A DNA stretch of 64,000 nucleotides from Octopus bimaculoides (GCF_001194135.2 NC_068997.1:31701924-31765923); one strand, 5' to 3'. Positions 74 through 63,921 are shown, numbered from the stretch's first letter. Program-made: numbers and translations. The notes: generated from the letters alone by a model not told the origin.

Positions 74-301
74 AACTCAGTGCTTTGAGTAAAATAAACA
101 TGTCAGACTAATAATGATGCACTTTGTTAGATACTTATTGAGAGAGGGGGGTATGTAGATAGATAGATAAAGAGAGACAGACAGACAAATAAACAGACAA
201 ACACATACACACAAACAAACACACACACACACAGATATACATAAGAACATTAAGTGATGAAATAGAATTGAAAATATCAGTAATGTAAAAGATGTTATTA
301 C

Positions 302-410
302 CTGAACACAGTTTAAATCATCAATAAAACACAATTTCCTGTAAATGCCTTTAGCTTTTAATCCAGTGATGTTGTTTAACTTGTCTTTCAGAAACTGTGG
401 TGTGGTCAAC
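302..410 (-). CDS. DHC exon 20 (AAA3 Walker B FIDD)
   Basis: [36 protein letters not shown]; phase 2-0; CAG|GTAATA. Confidence 0.92.
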
Positions 411-34444: not shown

Positions 34445-37400
34445 TATTGCTGTTTTCGTTGTGGTTAATCAGTACAATTTACAAAATGAAACAGAAGCTG
34501 AGAATTTCATGCATACCACAGTGTGTGTGTGAGAGTATAAGTATGTACATGCTATATATATAAATGAACACACTATAAAAAGTTACTCACCAGATGATGA
34601 AGACATGGTTTTATCACAAGCAGCTGACATTTTCGCAATATTTGAAAAGAATTGTTCAACTTTAATGGAGAGATTCCTAGTCTGACTAAATCCTGTAATG
34701 ATAAATTGCAAGTTCAAATATTTACACATGTTCTTATAGCAGTTGTTCAACACATCTCTGCAACACTGTTATTACATAGTATGGATTAGATTCATTTGAT
34801 AACAGAATAATTGGCAGTAACTACAGCAACAACACTACCAACTTAGAATGGTAGACCATTGTATACTGATCAAGTGACTTACTCAAAGTAACAGATAATT
34901 TTTGTTTCCTCAATGATATAATTAGTGTTAGCAAATTAATGAGACGTCTCTCATGGACACTAGAAATAGCAGCGAATTCTCCCTCATATATCATTCTGCC
35001 ATTTAAAAAAAGAATTAAAAAAACATATTGGAGCAGGCATAGCTGTGTGGTAAGAAGCTTGCTTCCCAACCACATGGTTCAGGATTCAGTCCCACTACAT
35101 GGCATATTGGGCAAGTATCTTCTACTAAAGCCTTGGGCTCACCAAAGCCTTGTGAGTGGATTTAGTTAACGAAAACTGAAAGAAGCCTGTTGTATATTAT
35201 ATGTATACATATGTTTATATCTGTGTGTGTCTCCCACACTTGATAACTTGACATCTCTGTACTCCATAACTTAGTGGTTCAGCAAAAGAGACTGACAGAA
35301 TAAGCATCAGGCTTTAAAGAAATAAGTATTGGGATTGAGACATTCAACAAAAAATTCAAGGCAATGCTGCAGCATGGTCACAGCCAAATGGCTGAAGTAA
35401 AATATAAAAGATAGATACAGCTCATATCAATTAATGTTGGCCCATCCACAGTGTGCCAGAATAAGATAGGGTGGTCATAGCTGGATTGTCTTTGATTATG
35501 GGTCAGCTCTATCAGGGCTGACTTGGCACTAAGCATCAATTAATGCTGGTACTATTGGTGTCCTAGAGACAGTATCATAGGATGGTTAAGCTAGAATGAT
35601 CTCTGTCGGAGTTCAGCAGTTATGTGTAAAAAATGTAAGCTAACTGGCAAAAGTCACAAATTTTTAACAAGCTAATTGGCCAATTGTGACACCAGTGCCT
35701 GTTTTGACACTGTCAATCTATATATTGTTGGTGAGGAGATGAATCATTGCTATCTCTAGCAGTCAAATATCTATCATTGACGAGACCAAACAAGGCTGAA
35801 ATCACGTGATCTGGTAGTCACGACGCTGGAGATGGCATGGATTTGTCTTTCCATTAGTGATATAAACAAGAGTGCATTTTGCACCAAAAGCCAATATGAG
35901 AGTTTCTCGCATGGTATCTATTGCAGTATAATTTGTTCTTACAGAACATCCACATTTAAGTGGAAATAATCATGACCACTTAGTATTAATATTACCTCTG
36001 TTCTAACACTGTTACTCTGCTCTGGCCTGTTCTGGCACTGTTATTGTACACATCACTAGTAGGGAGATGAATCACTGCTGTCTCTAGCAGTTGAGCATCT
36101 ATCATTGTCAAGACCAAGGAAGGTCGAAATCACATGATTTGGTGGTCTCAGTGCTGAAGGTGGCAGGGGTTTGTCTCCCCACTAGTGATATAAAACATGC
36201 ATGCATTTTGCACCAAAGTCGATATGAAAGTTACTTTCATGGTAACTAATGCAGTAAAGTTTGTTCTAACAGAACATCCATGCTTAAGTGGGGATAAATA
36301 TTTCCTCTAGTTATACACATGTGCACAAAAGGTAGATAATGGAAAACATGTCAGATATGTGATATTGTAGAGTAGGGAAAGAACTGTGGATGAAATATTG
36401 GTGCAGGCATGGTTGTGTGGTTTAGAATTTTATTGGACACAAATTCTGTGGAAGAGACAACGTGAAAGATTCTTGTTTGTTGCTTCTATACTTACAACAT
36501 TTCTATTAGCAACAGTAAGTTGAAGAGAGAGCCTTTATCTGCTCACCTGATCTGCTAGAAACAGCAGTGAAATCTCTTTTACATTAGACCTAACAATTTG
36601 AAATAAAGTAGGAAACATCAAAAGATGTAGTCTCCAATACATAAAATAACAAGATGGTCATGGCTGGAATGTTTAATCAGATCTGGTAAGTCAGTGCTGA
36701 CCTATGATCAAACAACAACAATCAGGATCCTTATCATCATAGCAGTAATGACCCCAGTGAAGCTACTAATGCTTACAATGATATTAAAACAAATATAGTA
36801 AACTGCTGCACCTAAAAAAAAATAAATGAAGTACTTTGAGTAGCATTTGAACATGTATTGAACAACAGAGAATTCCAGTATTTTATTCTCGTTGCCACCT
36901 TAACAACAAATATGTCATAATCTTTAATTTCCTTTATCAATATATGTCTTAATTGTTATAGAGTTAATTAATTGCATTCATTTCAATAATTATCTCTGAG
37001 ATATTGTGAGATGGTACATGATTAATTTGTTACACCTAATATTGTCCCAACATCAATAGATTATCAATATATTATTTCACAATATAATAATATTAATCAA
37101 CTGAAAAGTGATGCAACTAGTTTATCAGTGAATTACAATGAAGCTTTCATTTAGACTTCGATCTTTGCATATGAAATTACCAAATACAATGAGATCAGCT
37201 CATGGTCATTTTATAACCTTTACACTAAATCATGGGGACGGGGAGAAGTTATCAGTAATCTTGAACTGTTAATGACTTAAAAAGCCTTCATTATCTTATA
37301 GTATGAGAAGAAAAATTATCTTTGATATTCAGATATTATCTTAATATTCTCATCATCTCATAGATTAATAATGAATTATCTGTTAAGATTTTAATGTAAA

Positions 37401-40400: not shown

Positions 40401-43400
40401 CAAGAAACATATATGATATATTGTTGTTTAGAGGTGATAAAAAAAAATCCTAATCAAAATTTATAACAAGAGATGCAACTTTCATCCTTCCTGTTCTATA
40501 ACTGGCACTCCATCAGTTATGATGATGAAGGTTGCAGTTCATCCAGTCAATGGAACAGCCTGCTGGTGAAATTAACATGCAAATGGCTGAGTACACCACA
40601 GATACACGTACCCTTAACATAATTCTCAGGGAGATTCAACATGATATACTGAATGTGACAAGGCTGGCTCCTTGAACTGCAGGTACAATTCATTTTTGCC
40701 AGGTGAGTGGACTGGAGCAATGTGAAATAAAATGACTTGCTCAAGCAAACAACACACTGCCATGAATCAAACTAATGACTATGAGCTGAATACCCTAACC
40801 ACCCAAGCCATATACCTTCTAAAGCCATCAACTAACTGCATATGTTCCATCGTCTTCTTCCCTGTCAATACCTCTTTAAGCAGTTTTATCCATAAATCAC
40901 CATGTTCACTAGAAGGAAAGTATTGTGTTACATGACCAAATCAATTATTTTCTGCCTTCAAAAAACTAGCAGAAGATAACTTACCATTAACATAGAGTAA
41001 TGATTCCAATATACTTTGAAAAGAAGGTCGAAGACATGCCACTGGTCTAAAATGTTTAATGACCTCAGGAGGAAGAAAAGCTGTTACTGATGGGTAGACT
41101 GGTAGCTTAGTTGGGTCATATGGTTTATTCTCTTGGGTAGAACACAATGTAGCAATTATTGCTCCTCCAGGTATCAGTTTCATTTCATTATCTCCATGTG
41201 TCACCATTAATTGTCCACTTTTGTATGCATCCATTATCTTTGCAGTTTCTCTGACAAGTTGTGCCAACTGGGAAGGCAATAGACGGTTAATTTCTGTCAA
41301 ACATAACCAACACCCTAAAAAAAAAATGAATGTCAAGAAAATATTGTCTCAATGATAAATTCATTAAGTATTCTGTAATTAATTAGATTAAAAATATTAA
41401 ATCTTGATTTCAGATTTTGGCACAAGCCCTTCAAGTTCAGAGGAGGGAGTAAGTCAATTACATCAATCCCAAGGTTCAACTTGTACTTATTTTCTTGACC
41501 CCAGAAGGACAAAAGGTAAAGTTGACCCTGGCAGAATTTGAACTCAGAACATGAAGACAGACAAAATGTCACTAAGCATTTCGTCTAGCATGCTAATGCT
41601 TCTGCCATCTTAAACATTAAGATGGATATCTTTAAACCTTTTGATGCTAACTTGTCTGAGAATGTACCTGATTCTATGGTTAAAAACAAAAATTTTAATG
41701 TTTTGATCTAAATTAAAATATTTCTTCAAAGTTTTATGTAGGAACCTTTTGTTAAATTATGTTCTAAACACCAACTTATGAATAAACTTATAAATAAAGT
41801 GGTCAATTATTGGTGGGTTATAATAATGTTTGTATGTCGTTGTCACTGATAACCAGAACATCACATGGGAGAAGAAGATGGGTCATGGTGCGTCTGACTG
41901 TGGCCAATCAGTCTGATGCATACTCAGAAAGTTCTGTCACATGTCATGCACTGGTGGTCTGCTAGGGATGAAAACAAGGAGTTGGCTCTGGACTTGCACA
42001 GCTCACATTTTCTTTGTGCTATTGTGATCCCGTTCTGTTTGTAGGAAGTAGCACCTCTGTTGGTACGGCTACACCAGGCAGGGCAGTCCTGTGTTTACAT
42101 TTCCCAGATGTCAGAGTAGATCTAACAGAACTTCAGTGAGGCTTTGAATGTATCTTTCAAGTGCTTTTTCTGATCAGTTTGTGTGCACTTGCCCTCTGCC
42201 AATTCACTGCAAAACAGTCTTTTAGGTAGTCATGTGTCAGGCATTCAAACAAGGCAACCTGCCCACCTGACCTGCACTCGCCTCAGCAGTGTGTAAATGC
42301 TTGGCAGATCAGTTCAAAAGAGATAATAAGATGTCAAATGACATAAAATAATAGGTACATACAATGAGTATTCAGGTTAAATCAATACCTAAACTTTAAT
42401 ATTAAGTGCAGGAATGCAGGATCTACCTAAATAAGAACTAGCTACAGGCAATGTATTGGTAGAAATGGTGTAGGTATAACAGAACAAAAGCAGAGACAAG
42501 CAGTCACCCACAAAAATCTAAAAAGACAGTGTATTTCATCAGAAATATTATCTGATTAGTCTAATACTGAATACTGAGCTGCATCCAACTGGCTGTCGTT
42601 TTCATCGTCACGCATAAGTTCATATATTTTGTCGTGTTTACTTATGTATACCTGTATATACTTTTGTCAGAAAGTTTCCTAATAATATTTGCTTTGCCTA
42701 GAACAAAGCTCGCTCAAAAATTCGCCCTTTCAGAATGAATTTTCATATTGCAAAATTTTATCTCATAAATATTTTCATCTGTCTGGACAATAGACATGGA
42801 CAGTTCGGCTAAGAGTGCCAGTGCCTCAGCGCTACAGTTAGAGATGAACTTCCTACCATTACTTACACAAAACACATTGAACAAAAAAGAAAACATTGAT
42901 GTACTCACACATACACACACATTTGAACAACAATATGCATACTGATGCAAGCATTCCCTCTGAACAAGTGAGAAGCAGAAACAATGTAAACACTCGTAAA
43001 ACAATGAGCAGTGCAACCATGACTATCACTTCTCCTGTCACCACCACTATCACTTCTGCTACAGAAACTGCTACCATCAACAACATCACAGACAAACTAA
43101 ATGATTTTGCCTCTGTTTTAAAGTAAAAGAAATATTTTATGTTTGTCTTAAAGGAAGCACTTCTAGATTGTAGACAATTATTATACAAAGAAAACAGAAC
43201 TGTTAAACTGAACACCCCAGAAAGCATGTTGCAAGACATTTCCAAAAAGCAATTATTTACAAAACCCTGAACACAGAAAATAAAGATTAGAATAGGCCAC
43301 TCAAGAAACAGTTGAGAAATGTCTACAGCCCATGTGGGCTTTTAAAACACATATTGCAAGAGGCAAAATATTTGCCACGATCAAGATATGGTTTGATATG

Positions 43401-46400
43401 AAAGAATGCGCAAAGGAACACTCAATAAAATGCCTGGAATGCGGGGAACTTATAATGATTCTCACTTACCTCGGTTGTCAGGTGACAAAGGTAAAGTTTA
43501 AAGATGTGCTCCCAAAACAGAAATAAGATGGCTGGTGTCAGCCATCTGTTATGATTTTGCAGATGAAATCAACATCCTAGAAATTGCCACCCTGGGGCAG
43601 CAAAATCAGATTGGACTAGAGTTGGATCTATTGATTCAAGCAAATCTGGAAACAACAGAATATCTCCCAGATTTGATTCAAATTCCAGATGGCACAACTC
43701 TTCATGTGGCCGTTGAAGGCAGAAGGCCACATTGCTACCTTTGTGGTAGCAGACACCATCTTAAAAAAGACTGCCATCTAGCAAAAGAAGAAGAACAACA
43801 AAACCAAAAACCAAAAAGCAAACCAGCACTGCTATCCACACTGCCAGCAGCACAACTGATAAAGCAAATGGAAGAGTTCCACCAATCAAAAAGCCAGCCC
43901 ATCTAAACAACACCACCAAGTACAGAGACAACACCATCACCATCACCACCACCAGCAACAACAACACAAGCATCCAACCCAGAAGAAAGAAAGGAAAAAT
44001 TAAGCCCCATCCCCATCAACCCATACATCACATCTCAACAACCACCAACCAACAACCACCAACCAACAACATCAACAACAACACACAAATTGATCCCAAT
44101 ACCCTTCGCCTCCTTTCTTCTGATTCCTCCGACATGTCGTCAGACAAAGGCGATACAGAAGAATGGCAAATGGCCACAGGGAGGAGAAGAAGAAGGGGAA
44201 GGAAAAGAAAAGCCATGCAATCAATCAAATCAAGAAGAGTCACTACTCCCAAGAACACAACCTCCACACAAAACACATATATTACCACCAAACAATACAA
44301 ACACACAAACACCAAATGGCTTCACATTGTTGACAGCAATAAACACGAATAATTCAGACCTAATGCAATACATTAGGTTAAAGACCAACATAACAGAAGA
44401 CGATGTGAAAACCAACAATCACCCACACACAACACCACCACAACACATAAAAATCATACACGTGACACAAAACACATACAACACACTGAAATCTCTCTAC
44501 CCTGATGCAACTCTTCATGTGGCCGTTGAAGGCAGAGAGACTTCAAAAGTACTTATCAAAAAATATATACAAAAATCTTCTGAGAGAAAATTGTGAGGTG
44601 AAGAACAACCAACTTTCGAACAGTAAGTGACTCTCTCTCTCTCATTCTTTTCCTTTTCCTTTTGTGTGTAAAGCACAACTTTCAATAGGAACATGCTTAG
44701 AATAGGTTGTATAAATGTGCATGGCTTGGGGTTGCCTTGGAAACAAGGTTACCTGTTAAATGACATCAAGTCACAGAATGTGGATATCATAGCCATCAGT
44801 GAGACCAGACTCCACAACCTGCAGGCCCTCCAGCACATGTTTGGCAGACAATTCGACATTTATTTTTCTCCATGTCTGCTGAGAATGGGCAGAGGCAGTA
44901 CTGCAGTGCTTTTTCAGAAGAGTCTGGACCTCAAAGTAAAAGCAATATTCCTAGACCCAGTGGGTAGGCAGGTCGTCTTGGATATCAATGGCAGTAATGG
45001 GTGTGCTTTTCAACTGATAACAGTTTATGCACCATCCTTAACAGGTCAGCCAGATTTCTTTTGATGTCTAGAGGTTTTCCTGGGAATGTCTTGACCTTTA
45101 CTTTTAGTGGGAGATTGGAACGCTACCTTGGACACACATCTATACTATGTGGGTAGAGATAGGAATAAGAGGGGATGTAAATGTCTCAAAGACCTGCTCA
45201 GACATTTCCAACTGTCTGACAAGTACTGACTGGACCACTCGAATTTGTTAATGTGGACATGGAGCAACTGCATCGGGTCATCCAGATTGTATTTAGATAG
45301 AGTATTCTGTAGGACAGTGGATAGAGATAACATAGATTGTCCACAATTCCATATAGTCAGCTACACAGATCACAAATTTGTGACTTGTATGCTCGACTTA
45401 GAAAAGAATCATAGGCAGGGTCCCGGTTACTGGAAAATGAATGTGTTGTTCACAGCACATCAGGCTTACAGAGACTGGATTGGCAGATTAGTTAAGAGGG
45501 CATTGATGGGTGCCATCGTCAACGATAGATGGTGGTATGCCCTAAAGAAAGCAATTAAAGCAGAATTGGTTAGGTACAGTAAGGCCCTAGCATTAGACCG
45601 AAATAGAATAGAGAGAGACCTAGTTAAGAAATTAGAAGAGGCACTTAGAAGTGGCATCATGTCCAAAGTACTGGCGACAAGGTTGGCCCTCAACCAACAC
45701 TTCAACGCCAAACACAAAGGATGTATTGTCAGAACTAGGATGCATGCTCTGAGAAATGAAGGAACTGAAGCTGCTCAAGAGGCTCGAGTGGCGGAGGTGC
45801 AATGAGGCAACAAAGCCACTATTAGGTCTCTGACAGATGAACAGGGGCACGAATTACTTCAGCCTGAAAGGATGTGTGAGGCCTTTCAAAAGCACTTTGC
45901 CTGACTGTTCAGGACAACTGGTGGGTCAGAACGCAGGATGGACTTTAGTGCCTACCTGCATGGCCTGCCATGACTCTCAGCAAGAGAGGCGGAGTGTTGT
46001 GAAACACCCATCACAGCCGCAGATGTACGGGATGTGATGGCAGGCTGCACAGGAGACAAGTCACCAGGCTTGGATGGTCTGCCCTACGAGCTTTATTGTC
46101 ATATGCCAGACTTGTTCAGAGGCATCTTAGCAGCAGTCTACTACAACTGGTAGCAAAACAGGAGTATCCTCAGTTTTGTGAGCCAAGGAGCAGTGGCACT
46201 TCTAATGAAAGATCCAAACAAGAGGAACGTCATAGATAACTTCAGTGCAGATTTGAAGATTTTGGCCAAGGTGCTAGCCAAGAGGTTGGTGCTTGTCATT
46301 GAGAAACTGGTTGACAAGGCACAAACATGCACCATGCCGGACAGGAGTGTCCATGACAACCTCCATCTGATGTGCTACATCATTGACAGGGTAGTTAAGG

Positions 46401-49400
46401 AACCTGGCATGGGTGGGGTGCTGATCAATTTGGATCAATCAAAAGCTTTCAATACAATCGACCATCACTACTAGGAGGCTGTCCTTAGAGTGGCTGGTTT
46501 CAGTCCCATCTTCTGCAGCTGGGTCGCTGCCTTATACAGCAGCATCCGCTCAGTAGTTTGGGTAAATGGTCATCTATCCAGACCATTTAACATCACGTGT
46601 TTGGTCCGTCAATGATGCCCCCTTTCGTCGTTTCTGTACATATTGACTCTAGAGTCACTACTGCTGAGGGGCATCCTGCAAGAACTGGGATGTGGGAGGG
46701 GCATGTCTGCATATGTGGACGATGTCACTGTCATAGTGTTGAGCCAAAACATATTGACCTGGACAGCAAGACACTAAAAGAATATGAAGCAGTAACGGGA
46801 GAAAAAAAATTAACTTGGAAAAGTCAGTGGGTTTGTGGCTCAGCACCAGGAGAGGCAGGCCCATGCCATCCAACAGTGTCTCCATCGTGGGACACTGGAC
46901 CAACAGACTGTTTAAATTGCTTGGGGTCTGGTTCGGACCAGACCGCCAAATGGAGAAGAACTGGGATGAGATAGCAAGTAGGGCAGCCACTCTCACCCAG
47001 CAATGGGCCAAAAGAAAGCTATCCCTAAAAGGTCGGGCGGAGGTGGAAAACACGTACATCGCATCCGTCATGTCTTGTCCTGAGTCTACCATCACCAAAC
47101 CAGAATGCATACTCATCTGCTTTTTGCGGAAGGGAAGTGTTCTGGTGGTTAAGCGATCCATTTGCTATCAACACCTGCTAAATGGAGAGCTAGGCATGTC
47201 ATGGTTGATGATGTGCAGGCATGTGCTGAGACTGCTTCATCTACGCTTCATCAACGATGGTGAACAGGTGTGGTCACCGTTTATGAGGTGCACTTTCCTG
47301 CAGCTCGTCTCATTGGCTGAACTGCAGTGATGGATCAAACAGAGACCAAGGCTGGGTGAATGGCACCGTGAGTGCCGCCTTGCTCTCAAGCAACTTTACT
47401 GTATGGAACCAAACTTGTGTGATTTCAATTCCACGATGTCGTTTTATAGAGGATTAGTGGAGGTGAGGTGCGACGACGTTCCCAGGGAGAATCTTGGTTT
47501 GACAGGGAACACCTGACTCACCTGTTCAGGACAACTTTTGGGCTGGGTCCTATGGACAATCACCAGAGATCCCTGGCCTGGCAGTGCTGTTGGGAAGCAT
47601 TGCCCGTTTGGAATAAGCTCAACAGGCACAGATCGAGATACACCGGACAAACTTGCCAGAGATGTGGTCAGAGCACTGTAAACTATTCTGCACACACTTG
47701 TGCAGTGTTCAACCATTTCAGACCTGTGGGCTTATGTCGAATGGCTGCTGTCACATGTAGGACAAATTCAGTTATCTGCCAAATCTATTGTGAATATGCC
47801 CCACCACCTCCCTTTAACCGAGAAGGCAAGACAGTTTTCATTGTACTGGTGGCTATGGTCAAAAAATGTGTGCGGTGGACTTGTGCGAAAGGTTCAGAGA
47901 CAAACACTTTCCTCTCTGGCCAATCGCTCATCAACTTTTTCAAATACCACTTGAAAAAGAAGGTTAGAATAGAGAGGGAAGTTTTGTCTCATAAAAGTTT
48001 CAATAAAAGGTGGGTGAATGTAGCAAAGATAGTATGCGTGAATGACGAAATCACTCTAAGCATGATGAGAGAGAGAGAGTGCTTTGCTCTCATGTGTTTC
48101 TTTCTCTGCCTGAGGTTACCATGGTCTTTTGCGTAGGGTTGTCTTTCCAAGGATAAACATCTTTTCCATTTTTACCCTACCTTTTTTGCTGTTTACACGT
48201 CACAAACGCTTTCAATCCTTTTGATCGTTTTTTTTTCTCTTTCTTTCGAAAAGAAAAGTTCTACTTTGTATTGTCCTCTCTGTGTTCAGCCCTGCATGGC
48301 TAATAAACAAAAATGCCTCTTATTCAAGTATAGCTCCCATTTAAATCTTTTTTTTTTTTTCATCTTAGCATCTTTTGTTGGTAGGAGAGTTATTAGCCAT
48401 GCCCCACTGAGAGAACAGCAGTCAAATTACAAACAAAACAGTGGAGTTCTTTTTATCATGCTCATCCAATCACATAAACATACCAACATTAAGATTTAGA
48501 GAAAGGCAGGAGAGAGATATTACACTTGGAAACAACTGTGGTACTTCACATAAAAACTATGATCTTACTTCTGTGAGTTTTCCTGGAAAATATAGAAGTT
48601 TGGAAACTTTCTCTCTCATTGAATGTGTTCAATGAATGTTTGTCTCAAATTCTATTTTTCCTGTTCTTCCTTCTCTGCTTATTACCTTGAACAGATAATT
48701 ATATTTCATGAGACCATTCTACACTTCTTCCTCACCATTTATATGGATTTTTATTTGCACACAATCACAACACATCTTGATTGCTAAGCACATCTTATAT
48801 AAACTGAGATCTGAAAACCAACCAGCACTAATGACCCAACAATCTGTTCTTAAACATTATGCATCTCAAGGAAGAAAAACCTCATAACATGATTACTACT
48901 CATAAACAATTAACCCTTTAACATTCAGATTATTCTGTAAAACATAATGCATATTTATTCACATTGTTTTGAATTTATCATGCTTAACCTCATACTTTTG
49001 AGATTTCAAAGATGTCATTCATTATTCTAAGAATGACATTGTAGGGTAGGTGTGAAAGGCCAGATCCGGCCAGTTCGAACATAAAATAAGTAGAATATTC
49101 TGGCCAGATATGGTCAGTTTAAATGCTAAAAGGTTAAATCCTCATTCTGTTATCAATTAATGCTGGGCCTTAGAATATTTGATGATCTTTCGTTATCACA
49201 TATTCATATAGCAAGAATTTCCTCACAAAAGTTGGGTTTCTTCCTCTGAAACAAAAAAATACTTCTTTAGATATTTTAAACTTGATTTCGGTTTGAATTC
49301 CTACAGTTCATCTGAAGAGATTTTGTTACACTGCTGGAATCCAAAATGTAACTTTTCTCCAGTCAAGAATAACAACTGATAAGAAAATTTCACACTGGGA

Positions 49401-51132
49401 ACTGTATTACAAAAATGGTAAACAAACCTGTTAATATCGTTCCTTTCAAGACATCATGAAGAATATCAGTTGTAATATTTGAAGAGCAATTCACAAAATA
49501 CATAGCCTTTCCGAGACAGTAACTAAGATCTTTGGCAGTCTCTTTATTTTGACCATTCTTTATAGAGAACAAAAATATGGAAATAAAGATATTAAAAACA
49601 TGCATACATGCACACATCATGTGTGTGCATGTGTGTGTCTATCTGTATATCATTATCATTATTATCATTATTAAACGATGATGATGATGATATACACACA
49701 CATACTCACACACATAGATTTATATCATTATTATCATCATTTTGTTTGCTTTTCATTGCTTACATGGCTCAGACAAGAGTTTCTTGGGGCCATATGCTGT
49801 AATATTCACAATTTGCAGATGGATTACGCAAAAAAGTCATAGGTATGCAATCAGTAAACAGTTACATGGAGATATCACTATAAGTCTGGTTCCCCTCATT
49901 AAGAGAAATTTGCCAAAAGCAGTTAACTTAGTAGTGCTGGAGATTTAAAGGCTGAAGGGGGAGAGGAGGAAGAATAAGATCAAAAGGCAGAGAGAGGAAG
50001 GAGGATTACTATGACATAGAGGGAATGAAAAGAGGCAGAAGAGATGAAACAGAGAGAGGTAAAGTTAAGGTGAGCGTGGTGAAAGGGGGAGCCACTGGTG
50101 GCCAAGGGAATCTCACTAAGCAGACAATAAATTAGTTAGGAATGGCAACTGACCATATAGAGTGACAGGAAGAGGTAAGTAATGAATGAAAGGAGTAAGG
50201 ATGGGGGTAGCAGAGGAGGAAGATATGCTGAAATAGGGAGAAGGGTACAAGGAGAATAAAGAGAAAATGCTACTAGCATAGCTAAGTAATGTTGGCATTC
50301 CGTCGCTTACGATGTCGAGGGTTCCAGTTGATCCGATCAACAGAACAGCCTGCTCGTGAAATTAACGTGCAAGTGGCTGAGCACTCCACAGACACGTGTA
50401 CCCTTAACGTAGTTCTCGGGGATATTCAGCATGACACAGTGTAACAAGGCTGACCCTTTGAATTACAGGCACAACAAAAATTAAGAGTGAAAGAAAGTTG
50501 TGCTGGAAGAGTACAGCAGGGTTCGCCACTATCCCCTACTGGAGCCTCGTGGAGCTTTAGGTGTTTTCGCTCAATAAACACTCACAACGCCTGGTCTGGG
50601 AATCGAAACCGTGATCCTATGACTGTGAGTCTGCTGCCCTAACCACTGGGCCATTGCGCCTCCACAGCTAAGTAATAAGTAAGGTCTTAACCACAATTAA
50701 GAGAATCATAAATACTTTATGTATTCAACAAAAGTAGAATAAAATTTGTGCTTTACATAGAGAACCTATGGAATAACAAGGTATCATGAGGGAGAGTTAA
50801 GAAATTGTGTATTCTCTTCTTAGTATTCTGTATTTTTTATGTTTTGTGTGTGTGTGTGCGTACTTGCATGTGTGTGTGTGTGTGTGGGGAGAGTGCAGAC
50901 ACATAGCTTAGTGGTTAGGGTGTTGGATTCATGATCAAAAGATTGTGATTTTGATTCCTGAACCAGATAATACCTTGTTTTCTTGAGCAAAACACTTCAT
51001 TCTCCATTGGTCCAGTCCACTGACAAAAATGAGAATTTCCTGCAATAGACAGGCATCTCATCCAGGGTAGAAAATACATGCACCATGGAAACTGGGAAAC
51101 CAGCCCCATGACTTAGGAAAAATCATTATATT

Positions 51133-51201
<69 letters not shown>

Positions 51202-54200
51202 TGTATGTATGTATGTNNNNNNNNNNNNNNNNNNNNNNNNNNNNNNNNNNNNNNNNNNNNNNNNNNNNNNNNNNNNNNNNNNNNNNNNNNNNNNNNNNNN
51301 NNNNNNNNNNNNNNNNNNNNNNNNNNNNNNNNNNNNNNNNNNNNNNNNNNNNNNNNNNNNNNNNNNNNNNNNNNNNNNNNNNNNNNNNNNNNNNNNNNNN
51401 NNNNNNNNNNNNNNNNNNNNNNNNNNNNNNNNNNNNNNNNNNNNNNNNNNNNNNNNNNNNNNNNNNNNNNNNNNNNNNNNNNNNNNNNNNNNNNNNNNNN
51501 NNNNNNNNNNNNNNNNNNNNNNNNNNNNNNNNNNNNNNNNNNNNNNNNNNNNNNNNNNNNNNNNNNNNNNNNNNNNNNNNATATATACTTTTTACAGCTA
51601 CTTTTACCACATGGTTTTATGCTCATATCTTATATTTTGGACACAATGATGATATAAAGAATTTGTCGGATTTATTAAAGCAAACATAGAAAGATAATTT
51701 TGCACAGCCAACTTGACTTGGATGCATTGTTTTGAATGTCACAGGCTGCAATAATCATCCTGAGAAATCATTTTGTAGAGACATTAAGCGTTTTAAAAAG
51801 CACAGATTATTTCAAGGTGGTATCAAAAAATTCCCAGACTAGTTTTGTAGTTTGCCAACAGATGGCAACAAATGGTTGCGTAAACAATGAGAGTTTGCAG
51901 TGACCTTCACGAGGCAGCATGCTGAGTGACATCACCGTGTTTACTTCACAAGTTATGAAATTCGTGTTTTTGTAATCATGTGTATCCTGTAGTCTGCAAT
52001 TTTTGTCATGGACAGGAAGTTGGAACAAAGAGCCAATGTGAAGTTTTGCATTAAACTTGGGAAGTCTTCTACAGAGACACTGAACATACTTTGGGAAGCT
52101 TACAGCAATAGATTATATGCAATGTTTTGGGTAACACCGGCGCTTCAAAAGTGGAAGAACATCCCTGGAAAATGATGATTGAACTGGAAGACTTGCCACA
52201 AGCATCACCCCTGTAAATGAGGAGAAAATTCATCAGCTTGTGCATGAGGATCATCGGAGGACAATCAATGATGTCTTTAAACATTTGAGGGAGGACATTT
52301 GGTGAAAGTAACCGAATCTGTGGAGTGCAAAAAATTGGATTCTTCATGACAACAATGCACCCAGTCACCAAGCTCTCCTCACTTGTGAGTTTCTTGCCAA
52401 AAACAACATGGTCTCACTTCTGCACCCACCCTATTCACAAGATTTAGCACCTGCAGACCTCTATCTCTTCCTCAAAATGAAAACACAGCTCAAAGGTCAT
52501 CATTTTAACATTGTTGTCGAGATCAAGAGTGAAACACAGAAGGTCCTCAATTCACTTCCAGAAAAAGTGGAAAGGATACTGAGACCAGTACGTTGCTGTG
52601 CAAGATGACTATTTCGAAGGAAATGATGTTAAAACTTAGGTAAATAAGTTTTTTTTTATTAAACATAATTAGTCTGAGAACTTTTGATTCCACCTCATAT
52701 CAACCGAAAAATTTCATCAGCACTGATAGATGGTACTATCATATGTGATTTCAGCATAATTTATGCCTCATCAGCATCAGGCACCTCACTGCCAAATGCC
52801 ATACTGAAAATCTATCAAACCAATGTTAAGTTGGATGTGCAAATTACTATTCTTTACTGAGGCTACCTTGGTCTTTAATACCTAATTTATACACAGCCCA
52901 CTAGCTTTTTGCAACATCAGTTCCTGGATACTTGTGTGAAACTATGGTAAGGAAATATCTACAGCAATAAACATACATATCTAATTACATACAAATACAA
53001 CATGCATACATATATATTATATTCTAAAGAGCTTCTGTGAGTGTGTATAGAGGGCATATGAAAGCCTTTCTGTTTTACTTTACCACACACACAAATAAAA
53101 AACATCTAACCACCTTGTTTATACACACACATGTTTTATTTTTTTACTTGTTTCAGTCATTAGACTGTGACCATGCTGGGGCACAACGTTGAAAAATTTT
53201 CAATCAAACAAAGTGATGCCGGCACTTATTTTCAAGCCCGGTACTCATTCTATTGGCCTCTTTTGCTGAATTTCTAAGTTATGGGGATGTAAACAAACCA
53301 TCACAGGTTGTCAAGTGGCAGTGGAAGACAAACAACGACACAAAGACACACACACACAGATATATGTATATATATATGACGATGATGGGCTTCTTCCAGT
53401 TTCTGTCTACCAAATCCAGTCACAAGGTTTTGGTCGGCTTGAGACTATAGTAGAAGACACCTGCCCAACACAGCATGCAGTGAGAGTGAACCTGGAACTA
53501 TGCAGCTGGGAAGCTAACTTTTTACCACACGGCCACACTTGCATACATATACATACACACACACATTAACATTCACAGGAAAACACTGAAAGTTCATAAA
53601 ATAAAACTATTAAAAATGTTATTCTTACTTGGGAGCCAATGCAGAGGCCTGCATTAAATGATGTGATGATCCTCAATAAATGTACCAAACTCCTCTGTGT
53701 CACTGGGAATATCATCTCTCTGCCCATGACTCCTAAGTATTCAAAGCCGTACTTGAAACTTGAGTACATGTTCTGAAATTTATACATACACACACATTAC
53801 AATTGGTAAATTCCTATAATTATGCATTGGCAGAAAGTGACCTAGTGGTTAGGATGTTGCACTCACAATTGCAAAATTATGGTTTCAATTCCCAGACTGG
53901 TAGTTGCACTGTGTTCTTGAGCAAAACACTTCATTTCACATTGCTCCAGTTGAAAATGGAAAACCCTGTGACAAACTGATATCCCATTCAGGATGGTGGG
54001 GTGATGTTGGCCTGCCCACCCAGCCAGTGGGATAGCTACAACAATGTAAAGTGCATTGTGACCAGTGGTGTATAACAACATGCGATAGTTTCATTAGTAC
54101 AGTAATGTATTGATAGCACAATATCTTTCAGATATAAAATGGGAATATATATGACATTATTATACTACGACCTGCAGGCATAGCTGTGTGGTAAGAAACT

Positions 54201-54325
54201 TGATTCCCAACCATGGTTCTGGGTACAGTCCGACTACATGGTGACTTGGGCAAGTGTCTTTTGCTATAGCTGTGGACCGACGAAAGCCTTGTGAGTAGAT
54301 CTGGTAGACGGAAACTGAAAGAAGT

Positions 54326-54361
<36 letters not shown>

Positions 54362-57300
54362 TCTTTGTGTCTGTTTTCCTCCACTACCACTTGACAACCA
54401 ATGTTGGTGTGTTTACATTCCTGTAACTTAGTGGTTCGACAAAAAGCACTTCAAGGTGGTGCCCCAGCATGGTCACAGTCAAATGACTGAAACAAGTAAA
54501 AGATAAAAGATGAAAAGTTAAGGTGATGATATGGCAGAATTGTTAACATGCCAGGTAAGATGCTTAGTGGCGGTTCATGTCTTTACGCTCTGAGTTCAAA
54601 TTCTGCCAAAGTTGACTTTGTCTTTCATAATGCATCTCCTGATAAATTAAACAGTTTATTCTTTTATTCTTTAAGTTGTTTCAGTCATTTGACTGTGGCC
54701 ATGCTGGAGCACTGCCTTTAGTTGAACAAATTGACCCATGACTTATTTTTTGTAAGCCTAATACTTATCCTATCGGCTTCTTTTGCTGAACCACTAAGTT
54801 ACAAGGATGTAAACACACCAACATCGGTTGTCAAGAGACGGTGGGGGGGGGGGACAAACACAGACACACACATATAAATATATATATACTCAATGGGCTT
54901 CTTTCAGTTTCTGTCTACCAGATCCAATCACAAGGCTTTGGTCGGCCCAAGGCTATAGTAGAAGACACTTCCCCAAAGTGCCACGCAGTGGAACTAAACC
55001 CAGAACCATGTGGTTGGTAAGCAAGCTACTTACCACACAGCCATGCCTTGGGAATTTGTAATATAGTTCCATAGACCTACCTAGGGTAGGGTGAAATCGC
55101 TGGTTAATATTACATTTTTTGTGTTTAATTAAGATATTTAGAATAAGTACTTTTTGTCTGAACTCTAGATATGCACAACATGTGTTGTTGCAGTTGTTTA
55201 ACCTCACTCAACCTGATGGAACAGACTAAGGATGAAAAGTGTTCCAGTTGTGACTAAGGCAGCATTTTTATGTAATTAGAACTGTGTTCTTTTTTTATAA
55301 AGACAGTAAAGTATGATCTGAGAAAGTTAAACTGTTATTTCTAGCAGCTTGAATGTTATAGACCTGTTTGTTGGTTCACAACTTCATGTTCAATGTCATT
55401 CAACAACGATAAAACCATAGCATTTTATTCACTCACTTCACTGCATAACAAATTAGGCTTGTAACATCCTTCATCATATATGACTTTTCATTCATTCATT
55501 CATTCACACATACACACATACAAGGTTTAAAGGTCTTTTATCATATGCCAATGAGGAAACCTCTATGAGGTCATCCTGCTAGACATAGCAGCCATATTCA
55601 CCTCAAGCCCTCACCTTTCTCTCTTGAAAATGGAAGTACACATTGGACAATATCGTCTTGAATATACTCTCCAAGATAAGATGGGATTGTTATGGTTAAA
55701 ACTCTTCAATTGGTCACAGGCTTGCTTGATCAGAGACAATCTGAGTACTAAACAACTTAGTCCTTTGCTTGTCCTGTATATTACATGTGATTGATGCACA
55801 GGACATATTTCTCCAGTCTCTATGTATCATATAAGATACACAAACCCAGTTTTTTTCAACCACCAGAGTAACTTGGGACTTATGAAAGGAATGCTTTATA
55901 TTACTCAGAACGTATGAAACATGGGCTAAATAACAGTCTGAAAGCAAGCATGAACGTTTAGGATAAACTTATGAAAATGCTTTGGACAGGCAACAACGGC
56001 AAGACAACAATAGCATTTATTACAATTAGGAATCTCACTTTAATTTCAACTGATTTTCCTTCACTGTTTAAAATATAGTTAAGTTGGACTTTCCAATAGA
56101 AGTTTTGCTGTGGTTCCACCAAAGATTCCGACATCTGTACAAGAATATCTTTAAAATAGCACTGGCACAAAAGAAGACACCGAAGTTTTGTTATCTGTTG
56201 ACTGTAGATGTGAGGGTGCATTCCTTGAATTAATGACTGGCTAAAGACTTCTTTTGACTCAACAACTGATTCTGTTCCTGACAAAAATAACAAAAAAAAG
56301 TATGTTATTAAAAGGAAAGAACTGTTTCAGATTAATTATCCAAAGATCGAGTAGATTCAAGGAATTTGCATTCTTGGCATAGGTAGCAAGAAGGAGGAAG
56401 AGGAGGATAGAAAACAAGCCAACCTGATTTTCTACACATCACTTTCTCCTTTTCCAGAATTCTGAGCAGTTTGGACACTCGATCAATCATTGTATTTATT
56501 TCTGAAGCATAATTCTGTAAAAGACATCAAAATTGAAGTCTGGTTGAATTAACATAATCAACAGGATATTGAACAAAACTAATATGAAAGTGAATAGAAA
56601 TAATATTACAATGAACAGAAGAAATATTACGATGTTCAGAATATTCTGTTTCACAAACCACAACACATGACAGTCTTACGATGTTCTGCATCCTTTATTT
56701 CATCACATACTGTTGTACTATTATGGCCAATATACCCTGTTTCCCCATTCCCCAACGATAATGAAGATGATATTTATGTTATATTATATTCATAGTATAT
56801 TATGTAATATTGTAATATTATAATATAAATAAATTATTGGATTGTCAATAGTACCTCTCTATCTATTTAATTTATCTTTGTAATTGCATTATATCCATAT
56901 TCATATGGTATTCAACTGATGTACCAGTGAATTGGATGTTTAACCCACCCCTTTGAAGGAACTCTTTTCCTCAGTTTGATACTTTATACATGCATATATA
57001 TATATATATATGTTATATATATATATACGATGGGCTTCTTTCAGTTTCCGTCTACCAAATCCACTCACAAGGCTTTGGTTGGCCTGAGGATATAATAGAA
57101 GACATCTACCCAAGGTGCCACCCAGAACCATGTGATTGGGAAGCAAGCTTCTTACTACACAGTCACTCCTGTGCCTACATAGTTTAGAATATCAGAAAAA
57201 ATTGTTGATGTTATAGATACTTTGTCACAGCCTATATATTCTCATAGTGAAAAAAATGAGAATAAAATACCTAGGGACAGGAAAACCAATAGCAACATCA

Positions 57301-58106
57301 TTACTAGCACTATTTAGTATTGGGTACAACAAAATTTTAATCAGTTATAATTAATTATACTCTTAGTGAGAAGAAAGAATTGTTAACATAATTATCAATT
57401 CTGACCAAAAAGGCAGTGAAAACGATCCTGAAATCAAATTTGAAATAGAATGCTGTGATGAAACTTATAAAACTCTGCTAATTATTACCTTCAAAGCTTC
57501 TTGTGATGTTAAAGTATCTTTCAATATTCCATCCATCTGTTTATAAAAATTCAGTTTGGCAATGAGTGAAACCAGCTGAGGTGGCATCTTAATGATCCAA
57601 GAAAGCTCTTGATAAATTTCTGTCAAGTTTGTTACATCAGAACTGCACAAATAACCAGCTTTTGGGGGATTATAAACATCGTAATAGGCTGGTTCTTCCT
57701 CAATTTTTTGTGTGTCTGAAAATTTAAACATAACAAGAATAAATCATCATCATCCTCATCATTTAGCGTCTGCTTTCCATGCTGGCATGGATTAGACAAT
57801 TTGCCTGGAACTGGTAAGCCAGGGAACCACCAGGATCCATTCTGATTTGGTATGGTTTCTACAGTTAGATGCTCTTCCTAATGCCAACCAGTCTAAGAGT
57901 GCAGTGGGTGCTCTTTACATGCCACCAGCGCAGGTGGTTTTATGTGTCACTGACACGGGTGCCAGTTATGTGACACCAAGGCACAGGCATGGCTGTGTGG
58001 TTCAGTCCTACAATACAACACCTTGAACAAGTGTTGTCTACTGCAGCCTTAGGCTAACCAATGCCTTTTTGAGTAAATTTGATAAACAGAAAGTAAGAAG
58101 CCTGTC

Positions 58107-63331: not shown

Positions 63332-63517
63332 CTTTAAATACATAGTTAAGACAGTGAGGTTGTTGGCTTTAAATAGAAAACAAAACAGAATAAATTATTA
63401 ATGCATGAAGACTCAAGAATGAAATGCCTAAGACTTGAGATTAATAACCTCATAATTTATGTACCTCTGTTAGTATTTCAAATAACATTCATTGATCATT
63501 TTTCTACAAGTTTTATA

Positions 63518-63921
63518 GGCAGAGGAGTGGCTGTGTGGTAAGTAGCTTGCTTACCAACCACATGGTTCCGGGTTCAGTCCCACTGCATGGCACCTTGGGC
63601 AAGTGTCTTCTACTATAGCCTCGGGCCGACCAAAGCCTTGTGAGTGGATTTGGTAGACGGAAACTGAAAGAAGCCTGTCGTATGTATATATATATATATA
63701 TGTATGTGTTTCTGAGTCTGTGTTTCCCCCCCCCCACCATCGCTTGACAACTGATGCTGGTGTGTTTACGTCCCGTAACTTAGCAGTTCGGCAAAAAGAG
63801 ACCGATAGAATAAGTACTAGGCTTACAAAGAATAAGTCCTGGGGTCGATTTTCTTGACTAAAGGCGGTGCTCCAGCATGGCCACAGTCAAATGGCTGAAA
63901 CAAGTAAAAGAGTAAAGAGTA
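63518..63921 (+). mobile_element. SINE family A, young copy
   Basis: CpG-rich and close to consensus. Confidence 0.92.

What the first reader, a model, noticed from the sequence alone, without database searches (positions are those of the whole stretch)
40985..53772. Dynein heavy chain whose main ATPase site (AAA1) appears dead: a candidate pseudo-motor
Seen in sequence: exons 53629-53772 and 49428-49557 splice to AGLCIGSQ|[11 protein letters not shown], which aligns gap-free with canonical GGAPEGPAGTGKTETTKDL. The invariant Walker A G-K-T is therefore Q-N-K. In exon 40985-41314 Walker B FDEFNR is LTEINR (Asp to Thr), and the sensor-I TMNP is TLCS. Established: AAA1 is the essential hydrolysis site of all motile dyneins, and loss of its P-loop lysine abolishes motility. 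Inference: the frame is intact over 1,063 codons and 20 clean splice junctions, so this looks like a selected, non-motile structural or regulatory dynein (possibly DNHD1-related, e.g. in sperm flagella), not a pseudogene.
Basis: partly seen in the sequence, partly recalled or inferred. Interest (0 to 1): 0.82.

Follow-up and report, generated by a model that had tools for sequence, protein, structure and literature searches.

The report
Cephalopod dynein with dead motor site
This is an intact, evolutionarily maintained dynein heavy-chain gene whose main ATP-burning site (AAA1) has lost every catalytic residue; it belongs to a little-studied animal family of outer-arm-derived dyneins (most likely Kollmar's class 13) in which that site is degenerate in every member examined, so it is a real pseudo-motor but not a one-off.

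Summary
On the minus strand, exons 53629-53772, 49428-49557 and 40985-41314 have canonical AG/GT sites. They splice to ...AGLCIGSQ|[11 protein letters not shown]...[11 protein letters not shown]...IIATLCS (Pfam AAA_6, E 5.6e-23). Walker A, Walker B and sensor I are degenerate as claimed. I also found sensor II changed R to N and the AAA2 arginine finger changed R to Q. The AAA2 and AAA3 P-loops are intact.

The assembly gap is intronic. Five orthologues align residue for residue across the 53629|49557 junction. The equivalent Argonauta hians intron is 506 nt, has no N and holds no P-loop exon.

My model has 20 exons and 1,061 codons with no stop. Against the Argonauta orthologue, pN is 0.25, pS 0.61 and dN/dS about 0.25, so this is not a pseudogene.

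It is not DNHD1. Its relatives come from a hemichordate, an annelid, bichir, sturgeon, gar, lungfish and a salamander. All have a degenerate AAA1 and nearly all share an insertion after sensor I. They also have an outer-arm-beta-like tail, a longer AAA5 and a low-complexity C-terminal extension. These features match Kollmar's metazoan class 13.

Non-motile dyneins are already described (DNHD1, DNAHX). This is a new member of a known kind.

The parts
63218..63367 (-). Exon 1 of the fragment (linker region, ...[47 protein letters not shown]). The gene continues upstream beyond the window end.
   Evidence: Collinear with Argonauta P0173 residues 255-303. Donor 63218|gt, acceptor of next exon at 61251.
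61113..61251 (-). Exon 2 (linker; [16 protein letters not shown]...)
   Evidence: tblastx/tblastn to Argonauta and P0003. AG/GT sites.
57489..57658 (-). Exon 3 (linker)
56424..56514 (-). Exon 4 (linker)
56039..56277 (-). Exon 5 (linker, up to the AAA1 boundary). The acceptor is uncertain: 56277 or 56194.
53629..53772 (-). Exon 6: start of the AAA1 large domain, strand beta1 and the first half of the degenerate Walker A (...AGLCIGSQ). The G-S-Q codons are 53637-53629.
   Evidence: Argonauta exon A ends with the identical AGLCIGSQ.
51217..51580 (.). Assembly gap (N), inside the intron between exons 6 and 7. Not coding.
49428..49557 (-). Exon 7: second half of Walker A (NGQNKET, 49557-49537; canonical G-K-T becomes Q-N-K), helix and strand beta2.
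40985..41314 (-). Exon 8, which carries three features. Degenerate Walker B is LCLTEINR (41306-41283, Asp to Thr). Degenerate sensor I is ATLCS (41153-41139). The family-specific 17-residue insertion is [17 protein letters not shown] (41138-41088).
34591..34692 (-). Exon 9 (end of the AAA1 large domain and start of the small domain)
   Evidence: Argonauta P0002 starts inside the equivalent exon.
30658..30762 (-). Exon 10: AAA1 small domain with the sensor II position, GWNLKG (30727-30710), Arg to Asn.
28377..28557 (-). Exon 11 (AAA1 small domain)
26058..26190 (-). Exon 12 (AAA1/AAA2 junction)
23244..23401 (-). Exon 13: AAA2 with an intact Walker A, GPAGCGKS (23389-23366).
21094..21223 (-). Exon 14 (AAA2)
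19891..20004 (-). Exon 15 (AAA2)
14540..14842 (-). Exon 16: AAA2 arginine-finger position that completes the AAA1 site, LTQVG (14809-14795), Arg to Gln.
8744..8914 (-). Exon 17 (AAA2 lid)
7006..7125 (-). Exon 18
1347..1507 (-). Exon 19: AAA3 with an intact Walker A, GPSGSGKT (1450-1427).
299..410 (-). Exon 20: AAA3 Walker B, CFIDDLN (331-311). The gene continues beyond the window start.

Best explanation
What the window holds: the linker-to-AAA3 part (about 1,060 codons, 20 exons, minus strand) of a cephalopod dynein heavy-chain gene. The gene belongs to a divergent, outer-arm-beta-derived animal dynein family. That family is most likely Kollmar's metazoan class 13 (DHC13).

Shown:
- The AAA1 module keeps the AAA+ fold.
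- Every element needed to hydrolyse ATP at AAA1, and probably to bind it, is gone. This covers the P-loop Gly-Lys-Thr, the Walker B Asp, the sensor I Asn, the sensor II Arg and the AAA2 arginine finger.
- The AAA2 and AAA3 nucleotide motifs are kept.
- The gene is maintained by purifying selection in two cephalopods.
- AAA1 is degenerate in all family members seen, from annelid and hemichordate to salamander.

Inferred:
- The protein cannot run the AAA1-driven powerstroke cycle. It therefore acts as a non-motor subunit.
- It would assemble through its beta-type tail into a two-headed axonemal complex, with an outer-arm-like position or partner.
- It would use its stalk to tether or regulate rather than to slide microtubules.
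- Any nucleotide sensitivity would come from AAA3.
For: Sequence and splice sites.

Domain identity:
- Pfam AAA_6, E 5.6e-23.
- PDB dynein AAA1 hits.
- AlphaFold model with mean pLDDT 73.9, residues 30-150 mostly above 85. Its best Foldseek matches are all dynein heavy-chain structures, TM about 0.7.

Motif table: five AAA1 elements are lost and AAA2/AAA3 Walker motifs are kept, in the window and across the family.

Second cephalopod: an independent Argonauta assembly carries the same exons with a differently degenerate site (NFTIQET, LYLMDLNN, ASLHS). The flanking residues are conserved.

Selection: 910 codons give pN 0.25, pS 0.61 and dN/dS 0.25 (CI 0.20-0.31). The AAA1 exons give 0.06-0.36.

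Family membership:
- The best hits in 1.84 billion representatives are P0001, P0002, P0003, P0004, P0005 and P0006. Of these, P0001, P0003, P0004 and P0006 carry a readable AAA1 site and it is degenerate; P0002 starts after AAA1 and P0005 lacks the Walker motifs.
- In a held-out profile test the window scores 166 bits with the family profile and 110 with the canonical one. Argonauta scores 102 and 59.
- The NJ tree recovers the clade.
- A 15-17-residue insertion after sensor I is shared.

Class-13 features in full-length orthologues:
- The tail is closest to OAD beta chains: 233/176/141 bits, against 70 for gamma.
- There is an insertion of about 90 aa at the start of AAA5 and a 554-aa C-terminal extension.
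- The Argonauta orthologue has a Pfam MT stalk.
- These match the descriptions in PMC5100056.
Against: - No expression, proteomic or biochemical data exist. Non-motility is inferred from motifs.
- No reference class-13 sequence from Kollmar's set and no DNAHX sequence could be obtained. The class name therefore rests on matching published descriptions, not on a joint tree.
- Bootstrap support for the family clade on 193 AAA1 columns is only 0.59.
- Vertebrate members score only modestly above canonical dyneins with the window as query.
- Synonymous sites are near saturation (pS 0.61). The codon blocks were also chosen from conserved HSPs, which biases dN downward.
- The catalytic-Glu position of Walker B is still Glu in the window (TE), so a residual non-canonical activity cannot be formally excluded.
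- The tail, AAA4-6 and C-terminus of this gene lie outside the window.
Confidence: 0.72

Rival explanations
1. It is the cephalopod orthologue of DNHD1 (Kollmar class 11).
For: DNHD1 is also reported to have a poorly conserved AAA1 that lacks the Walker B catalytic residues, and it is needed for sperm flagella. A teleost DNHD1 has Walker A GPSLSGKKST and AAA3 GETGCGKT, which resemble the vertebrate members of this family.
Against: - Named DNHD1 P0130 ranks 130th with 59 bits.
- It prefers the canonical profile over the family profile (108 against 89 bits), whereas the window prefers the family profile (166 against 110).
- It lacks the post-sensor-I insertion.
- Its best full-length matches are canonical dyneins with CLDEFNR Walker B, not P0003 or P0004.
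- It joins the clade in only 13% of bootstraps.
Confidence: 0.05
2. It is an orthologue of DNAHX, the non-motile sea-urchin sperm dynein of Chai et al. 2025. DNAHX probably corresponds to Kollmar class 12.
For: The taxon pattern is similar: aquatic invertebrates up to amphibians, absent in amniotes. Orthologues are very long (5,400-5,900 aa) and have non-conserved AAA1 motifs.
Against: - DNAHX is DNAH8-like (OAD alpha in that paper's naming) and has a folded-back stalk without a normal MTBD.
- This family is closest to OAD beta (DNAH17/DNAH9 at 371/364 bits, against DNAH5 at 248) in both motor and tail.
- The Argonauta orthologue has a Pfam MT stalk.
- Published DNAHX residue numbers give the same sensor I to sensor II spacing as DNAH8 (71 residues). 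This family has 15-17 extra residues there.
- No protein with the reported Walker A Thr to Val change was among the 150 best hits.
Confidence: 0.08
3. It is still a force-producing motor. It would be driven by AAA3 (intact Walker A and B) or by non-canonical nucleotide handling at AAA1, so the loss of AAA1 motifs does not mean loss of motility.
For: AAA2 and AAA3 Walker motifs are strictly conserved across the family. The Walker B glutamate position is E in the window. The orthologue keeps a stalk/MT domain.
Against: From established dynein biochemistry, AAA1 hydrolysis is the only site shown to drive the linker swing and microtubule release, and P-loop Lys mutants of AAA1 abolish motility. 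Here five AAA1 elements are gone, and they differ between two cephalopods, as expected for unconstrained positions. AAA4 Walker A is also degenerate in the Argonauta orthologue (sequence).
Confidence: 0.1
4. It is a decaying pseudogene, or an assembly or annotation artefact in which a hidden or alternative exon restores GxxxxGKT.
For: An assembly gap lies in the intron next to the P-loop exon. The Argonauta annotation breaks the gene exactly at AAA1. No close annotated protein covers AAA1.
Against: - The model has 1,061 codons without a stop, against 62 and 95 stops in the other frames. All 19 internal junctions are AG/GT.
- pN is far below pS in every one of 23 blocks.
- The junction is residue-contiguous with four orthologues, P0001, P0003, P0004 and P0006.
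- The Argonauta intron is complete and holds no P-loop exon.
- Four other catalytic motifs on four other exons are degenerate too. A local error cannot explain that.
Confidence: 0.03

Closest known systems
Class-13 dynein heavy chains (DHC13) of Kollmar 2016, Mol Biol Evol 33:3249 (PMC5100056)
   Same: - The distribution is animal-only and includes molluscs.
- Similarity to canonical dyneins is very low.
- The N-terminal tail is like outer-arm beta (class 4).
- AAA5 is longer.
- There is a low-complexity C-terminal extension.
The last three features were seen in the full-length orthologues P0003 and P0004.
   Different: Kollmar explicitly did not analyse the ATP sites. The family-wide loss of AAA1 catalytic motifs, and the complete loss in cephalopods, is not described there. 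No reference DHC13 sequence was available for a direct test. An ichthyosporean protein (P0129) is the closest outgroup, so the lineage may pre-date animals.
DNAHX / dynein-X (Chai et al. 2025, bioRxiv 10.1101/2025.01.18.633724)
   Same: It is a non-motile dynein heavy chain with non-conserved AAA1 motifs. It is found in aquatic animals up to amphibians, is very long, and is outer-arm derived.
   Different: DNAHX is DNAH8-like, has a disrupted stalk/MTBD and an AAA4S insertion, and still binds ATP at AAA1 (Walker A Thr to Val, Walker B present). This gene is beta-like and its orthologue has a normal stalk domain. In the window's AAA1 the P-loop Gly-Lys-Thr and the Walker B Asp are gone, although the catalytic-Glu position of Walker B is still E.
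DNHD1 (class 11; human Q96M86)
   Same: It is an 'orphan' dynein with a poorly conserved AAA1 that lacks the Walker B catalytic residues. It was once called a ghost gene and is now known to be required for sperm flagella and nodal cilia.
   Different: It is a separate lineage by score, profile and full-length comparisons. It has no post-sensor-I insertion.
Canonical outer-arm beta heavy chains (DNAH9/11/17; Chlamydomonas ODA beta)
   Same: They are the closest canonical relatives in motor and tail. The domain order is the same: linker, then AAA1, AAA2, AAA3.
   Different: Canonical chains have invariant GPAGTGKT, DEFNR and ITMNP motifs, the sensor II Arg and the AAA2 Arg finger. All five are lost here.

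Membership tests
Dynein heavy chain (motor region) | AAA1 module recognised by Pfam AAA_6 (PF12774) above its gathering score, followed by AAA2 and AAA3 modules in order | tested here: met
   AAA_6 scores 81.9 bits against a cut-off of 25.2. AAA2 and AAA3 P-loops lie downstream in order. The AlphaFold model's best Foldseek matches are all dynein heavy-chain structures, TM about 0.7.
Motile (force-producing) dyneins | AAA1 Walker A GxxGxGK[ST] | tested here: not met
   The motif is GSQNGQNKET in the window and GSQNFTIQET in Argonauta.
Motile (force-producing) dyneins | AAA1 Walker B hhhhDE | tested here: not met
   The motif is LCLTE in the window (Asp to Thr) and LYLMD in Argonauta. No family member has DE.
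Motile (force-producing) dyneins | AAA1 sensor I Asn, sensor II Arg and the AAA2 arginine finger | tested here: not met
   Sensor I is ATLCS against ITMNP. Sensor II is GWNLKG against GLRAIK (R to N). The arginine-finger position is LTQVG against VSRAG (R to Q).
Kollmar class 13 (DHC13) | N-terminal tail homologous to class 4 (outer-arm beta) | tested here: met
   Tested on orthologue P0003, because the tail lies outside the window. Chlamydomonas beta scores 233 bits, Tetrahymena beta 176, DNAH17 141 and DNAH9 134, against OAD gamma at 70.
Kollmar class 13 (DHC13) | Longer AAA5 domain and a unique low-complexity C-terminal extension | tested here: met
   Tested on orthologues only. P0003 and P0004 each have an insertion of about 85-90 aa at the start of AAA5. 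P0003 has 554 extra C-terminal residues and P0004 about 120. These regions of the window gene lie outside the window.
Kollmar class 13 (DHC13) | Groups with reference DHC13 sequences (for example Lottia gigantea) in a motor-domain phylogeny | not testable with these tools
   No CyMoBase reference sequences or supplements were available. Only the grouping with unnamed family members was tested: clade recovered with bootstrap 0.59, and the held-out profile favours the family by 56 bits.
Kollmar class 13 (DHC13) | Restricted to Metazoa | tested here: inconclusive
   All clear members are animals. The nearest outgroup, P0129, is an ichthyosporean dynein that also has a degenerate AAA1.
DNHD1 (class 11) | Closest similarity to named DNHD1 proteins | tested here: not met
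   Named DNHD1 P0130 is a distant hit (59 bits), and neither the profile test nor the full-length search links it to this family.
DNAHX (probable class 12) | DNAH8-like (class 3) affinity and a stalk without a normal microtubule-binding domain | tested here: not met
   Affinity is beta-like, not DNAH5/8-like. The Argonauta orthologue has Pfam MT (PF12777) at residues 1193-1426.
DNAHX (probable class 12) | Direct orthology to Lytechinus XP_041462850; AAA4S PS2i insertion | not testable with these tools
   The sequence is not retrievable here, and no DNAHX-like chain appeared among the PDB sequence-search hits.

The most novel reading that the evidence does not exclude
This family (class 13) may be the unidentified second heavy chain of the sea-urchin 'dynein-X' complex. 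If so, dynein-X would be a heterodimer of two AAA1-dead heavy chains: class 12 (DNAHX) with a folded-back stalk, and class 13 with a normal stalk. It would function as an ATP-insensitive or AAA3-gated tether or transport adaptor rather than a motor.

What points this way:
- Kollmar predicted a class-12/class-13 heterodimer from the tails.
- Chai et al. saw a partner head with a canonical extended stalk and could not identify it.
- The two families show a similar taxon pattern: aquatic animals up to amphibians, none in amniotes.

A related point: the family-wide death of AAA1 in class 13, alongside strictly conserved AAA2 and AAA3 P-loops, is not described in the papers I could search.
Probability: 0.2. 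Interest if true: 0.72.

Novelty: new member of a known kind. Interest (0 to 1): 0.45.

Why it matters
Dyneins are normally defined by AAA1-driven motility. Two 'dead-motor' heavy chains, DNHD1 and DNAHX, have recently gone from curiosities to proteins needed for, or found in, sperm flagella. This gene shows that a third outer-arm-derived lineage has also lost AAA1 catalysis, and that it is old: it occurs in annelid, mollusc, hemichordate and non-teleost vertebrates.

The loss goes furthest in the cephalopods. The P-loop Gly-Lys-Thr, the Walker B Asp and both arginines are gone, and Argonauta has no lysine in the loop at all. AAA2, AAA3 and the overall fold stay under selection.

The family is therefore a natural experiment on what a dynein ring does without its engine. 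It also supplies a concrete candidate for the unidentified partner in dynein-X. In practice, the result explains why annotation pipelines break this gene at AAA1, as in Argonauta.

Tried and rejected
1. The word-indexed protein search was of little use, although the third search did return the upstream Argonauta model.
   - With the 201-aa AAA1 peptide it found nothing.
   - With the family alignment it returned only two short Capitella-like fragments and missed proteins known to be in the collection.
   - With the 1,039-aa model it added only the upstream Argonauta model and one canonical fragment.
   - No Octopus, squid or other mollusc orthologue with AAA1 was recovered, so within-cephalopod conservation rests on one species.

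2. I first took the family to be DNAHX, from its taxon pattern and length. I dropped that for three reasons: beta rather than DNAH8 affinity, a normal stalk domain, and the sensor I to sensor II spacing.

3. DNHD1 was rejected.

4. The first paper search, with 'Walker A', was swamped by unrelated hits. The search for DHC12/DHC13 returned mostly Chlamydomonas gene names.

5. The first bootstrap tree run timed out. I repeated it with 43 taxa.

6. The Kollmar supplements are not held.

7. Structure prediction added only confirmation of the fold. It cannot decide nucleotide binding.

Full report
**Observation**

The gene lies on the minus strand. The third is read in phase 1.

All three exons have canonical AG...GT borders.

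The spliced 201-aa peptide matches Pfam AAA_6, 'hydrolytic ATP binding site of dynein motor region', at E 5.6e-23. It also matches AAA1 of many solved dyneins. An AlphaFold model (mean pLDDT 73.9) has the AAA+ alpha/beta core, and its best Foldseek matches are all dynein heavy-chain structures, with TM about 0.7.

**The site itself**

| Element | Window | Canonical | Window coordinates (-) |
|---|---|---|---|
| Walker A | GSQ\|NGQNKET | GPAGTGKTET | 53637-53629 + 49557-49537 |
| Walker B | LCLTEINR | GCFDEFNR | 41306-41283 |
| Sensor I | ATLCS | ITMNP | 41153-41139 |
| Sensor II | GWNLKG (R to N) | GLRAIK | 30727-30710 |
| AAA2 arginine finger | LTQVG (R to Q) | VSRAG | 14809-14795 |

HMMER against canonical dyneins prefers a one-residue deletion that aligns the K of NGQNK with the P-loop lysine. 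The loop is non-canonical either way.

In contrast, three other motifs are intact:
- AAA2 Walker A, GPAGCGKS
- AAA3 Walker A, GPSGSGKT
- AAA3 Walker B, CFIDDLN

**The assembly gap**

The N run at 51217-51580 sits in the intron between the two P-loop exons. It is flanked on its gene-3' side (window 51216 and below) by (ACAT)n/(AT)n.

- Orthologues P0001, P0003, P0004, P0006 and P0152 map collinearly to the three exons. For P0001, P0003, P0004 and P0006 the residues left unaligned at HSP ends equal exactly the codons left in the exon, so no residue is missing across the junction.
- In the Argonauta hians genome the equivalent intron is 506 nt, has no N, is low-complexity, and contains no P-loop-coding frame.
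- No other G....GK[ST] exists in any readable frame of the window.
- The other five N runs also fall in introns of the model.

**Gene integrity and selection**

My model has 20 exons and 1,061 codons with no stop. The other two frames of the same concatenate have 62 and 95 stops. All 19 internal junctions are AG/GT. The gene runs off both ends of the window.

The representative search returned an Argonauta hians protein, P0002 (GAB1609466), that begins just after the AAA1 large domain. Fetching its locus (L001) showed the following:
- The upstream model P0173 (Ahia01_001232100) ends at ...[10 protein letters not shown], immediately after exon 6.
- The next two AAA1 exons are present but unannotated.
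- The annotation therefore broke the gene at the degenerate site.

Twenty-four collinear coding HSPs link the window (64 kb) to 22.6 kb of Argonauta.

Nei-Gojobori counts over 910 codons give:
- pN 0.25 and pS 0.61
- dN 0.31 and dS 1.23
- dN/dS 0.25, with a bootstrap interval of 0.20-0.31
- pN below pS in all 23 blocks
- AAA1 exons at 0.06-0.36

Caveats: synonymous sites are near saturation, and the blocks were chosen from conserved HSPs.

The catalytic positions themselves differ between the two species:

| Element | Window | Argonauta |
|---|---|---|
| Walker A | NGQNKET | NFTIQET (no lysine at all) |
| Walker B | TE | MD |
| Sensor I | LCS | LHS |

Their neighbours ([42 protein letters not shown]) are conserved. 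This is the pattern expected for a long-dead site in a maintained fold.

**What family**

In a HMMER scan of 1.84 billion representatives only three proteins scored below 1e-30. The best hits, with source names, were:

| Id | Source | Note |
|---|---|---|
| P0001 | Saccoglossus | 898 aa, partial |
| P0002 | Argonauta | starts after AAA1 |
| P0003 | Pleurodeles | 5,410 aa |
| P0004 | Protopterus | 5,930 aa |
| P0005 | Acipenser | |
| P0006 | Lepisosteus | |
| P0010 | Capitella | |
| P0011 | Erpetoichthys; cluster mate P0152 is Polypterus | |

Every one of these that carries the AAA1 Walker motifs has a degenerate site; P0002 starts after AAA1 and P0005 lacks the Walker motifs:
- Walker A is GPxxxGK[KRQ][ST] in the vertebrate members, with the Thr after Lys lost.
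- Walker A is GPNWSGRRE in Saccoglossus and SQIGTGKLE in Capitella.
- No member has Walker B DE.
- No member retains the sensor II Arg.
- The AAA2 arginine-finger position retains Arg only in Pleurodeles.
- AAA2 GPAGCGKS is almost invariant.

All but the gar model also share a 15-17-residue insertion after sensor I that canonical dyneins and DNHD1 lack.

With the cephalopods held out of the family profile, scores in bits were:

| Sequence | Family profile | Canonical profile |
|---|---|---|
| Window | 166 | 110 |
| Argonauta | 102 | 59 |
| Capitella (held out) | 190 | 131 |
| Teleost DNHD1 (P0130) | 89 | 108 |

A neighbour-joining tree of 193 AAA1 columns recovers the family. Bootstrap is 0.59 for the family clade, 1.0 for the cephalopod pair, and 0.13 for the family plus DNHD1.

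**Naming the family**

Kollmar (PMC5100056) defined three relevant classes:
- Class 11 is DNHD1.
- Class 12 is holozoan, has an aberrant stalk, and has a tail like class 3 (DNAH5/8).
- Class 13 is metazoan. Its tail is like class 4 (outer-arm beta), its AAA5 is longer, and it has a low-complexity C-terminal extension. A mollusc (Lottia) is used as an example.

Kollmar states that the ATP sites were not analysed.

The full-length orthologues here fit class 13:
- The P0003 tail scores 233/176/141/134 bits with Chlamydomonas beta, Tetrahymena beta, DNAH17 and DNAH9, against 70 with OAD gamma.
- The P0001 motor is closest to DNAH17/DNAH9, at 371/364 bits, against 248 for DNAH5.
- P0003 and P0004 carry an insertion of about 85-90 aa at the start of AAA5. 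Their C-terminal extensions are 554 and about 120 aa.
- The Argonauta orthologue has a Pfam MT stalk.

DNAHX (Chai et al. 2025) is DNAH8-like with a folded-back stalk, so it matches class 12 rather than this family.

DNHD1 is a different lineage. Its best full-length matches are canonical dyneins, not P0003 or P0004.

I could not obtain reference DHC13 or DNAHX sequences. The class label therefore rests on matching published descriptions.

**Mechanism**

Shown: an intact AAA+ ring segment, a dead AAA1, conserved AAA2 and AAA3 nucleotide motifs, and purifying selection.

Established knowledge: AAA1 hydrolysis drives the linker swing and microtubule release, and P-loop lysine mutants abolish motility.

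Inferred: the protein is a non-motor heavy chain. It would use a beta-type tail to join a two-headed axonemal complex, and its stalk to tether or regulate. Any nucleotide response would come from AAA3.

Kollmar predicted a class-12/class-13 heterodimer. Chai et al. found DNAHX paired with an unidentified heavy chain that has a normal stalk. This family is a concrete candidate for that partner. That is speculation, which I put at about 0.2.

**Novelty**

Non-motile dyneins and class 13 are both in the literature. A cephalopod member is a new member of a known kind.

Two points were not found in the papers I could search:
- The family-wide degeneracy of AAA1.
- Its more extensive erosion in cephalopods, alongside conserved AAA2 and AAA3.

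Interest is moderate.

Noticed in passing
L001:5242-7147 (Argonauta hians BAAFZT010000080.1:20356963-20428886): The Argonauta annotation splits the orthologous gene in two exactly at AAA1. Ahia01_001232100 (P0173) ends ...[10 protein letters not shown], and Ahia01_001232200 (P0002) starts in the exon after the AAA1 large domain. Exons B (about 5895-6026) and C (6752-7147) are present but unannotated. P0002 also contains a run of GVVV low-complexity residues that looks like translated intron.
   Followed up: yes
window 1-64000 vs L001:1367-23969: The same 20 or so exons span 64 kb in the window but only about 22.6 kb in Argonauta. The intron between the P-loop exons is 4.1 kb here against 0.5 kb there, and the next is 8.1 kb against 0.7 kb. 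The introns in the window are therefore strongly expanded by repeats.
   Followed up: partly
window 44600-48200 (+), inside the 8-kb intron: This is a GC-rich block (0.43-0.48, against about 0.34 elsewhere) with several 120-220-aa ORFs on the plus strand. One has a weak Exo_endo_phos (APE-type endonuclease) match, E 3e-4, below Pfam's cut-off. It is probably a LINE-type retrotransposon inserted antisense to the dynein gene.
   Followed up: partly
window 2300-4210 (-): Remnants of a piggyBac-type transposase (Pfam DDE_Tnp_1_7, E 2.9e-10 and 1e-6) are broken over several frames. They lie in the intron between exons 18 and 19.
   Followed up: partly
window 63540-63724, 54220-54330, 16409-16549, 11177-11289 (-); L001 35389-35448, 37992-38102, 46162-46302, 59688-59828, 64482-64595: A short interspersed repeat whose translation reads ...[20 protein letters not shown]... 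occurs at least four times in the window's introns. It occurs five or more times in the Argonauta locus at 60-90% translated identity. The repeat family is shared between the two cephalopods.
   Followed up: no
window 33100-33875 (-), next to N gap 31956-32741: ORFs reading ...[34 protein letters not shown]... look by eye like an RTE/L1-type endonuclease fragment. Pfam gave no hit at E <= 0.01.
   Followed up: partly
P0130 (Gouania DNHD1) vs P0003/P0004/P0006: Teleost DNHD1 has AAA1 Walker A GPSLSGKKST and AAA3 Walker A GETGCGKT. Both are strikingly like the vertebrate members of this family (GPE[GA][ST]GK[KR]ST; GE[AT]GCGK[ST]), yet overall similarity does not link the two families. This could be convergence or a deep common origin of the 'new' classes, a question Kollmar also raised.
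   Followed up: partly
P0129 (Chromosphaera perkinsii, ichthyosporean, 4,745 aa): This is the closest full-length outgroup of the family (1,266 bits to P0003, above all canonical dyneins). It also has a degenerate AAA1 (GGSGIGKTQT; Walker B ICKEVGL). The dead-AAA1 lineage may therefore pre-date animals.
   Followed up: no
P0002 residues ~870-900 (Argonauta orthologue, outside the window): The AAA4 Walker A position reads VVIPEGVSSSFYG, against canonical LVGVGGSGKQS, so AAA4 also looks degenerate in the cephalopod protein. This was read by eye from the sequence and not aligned formally.
   Followed up: no
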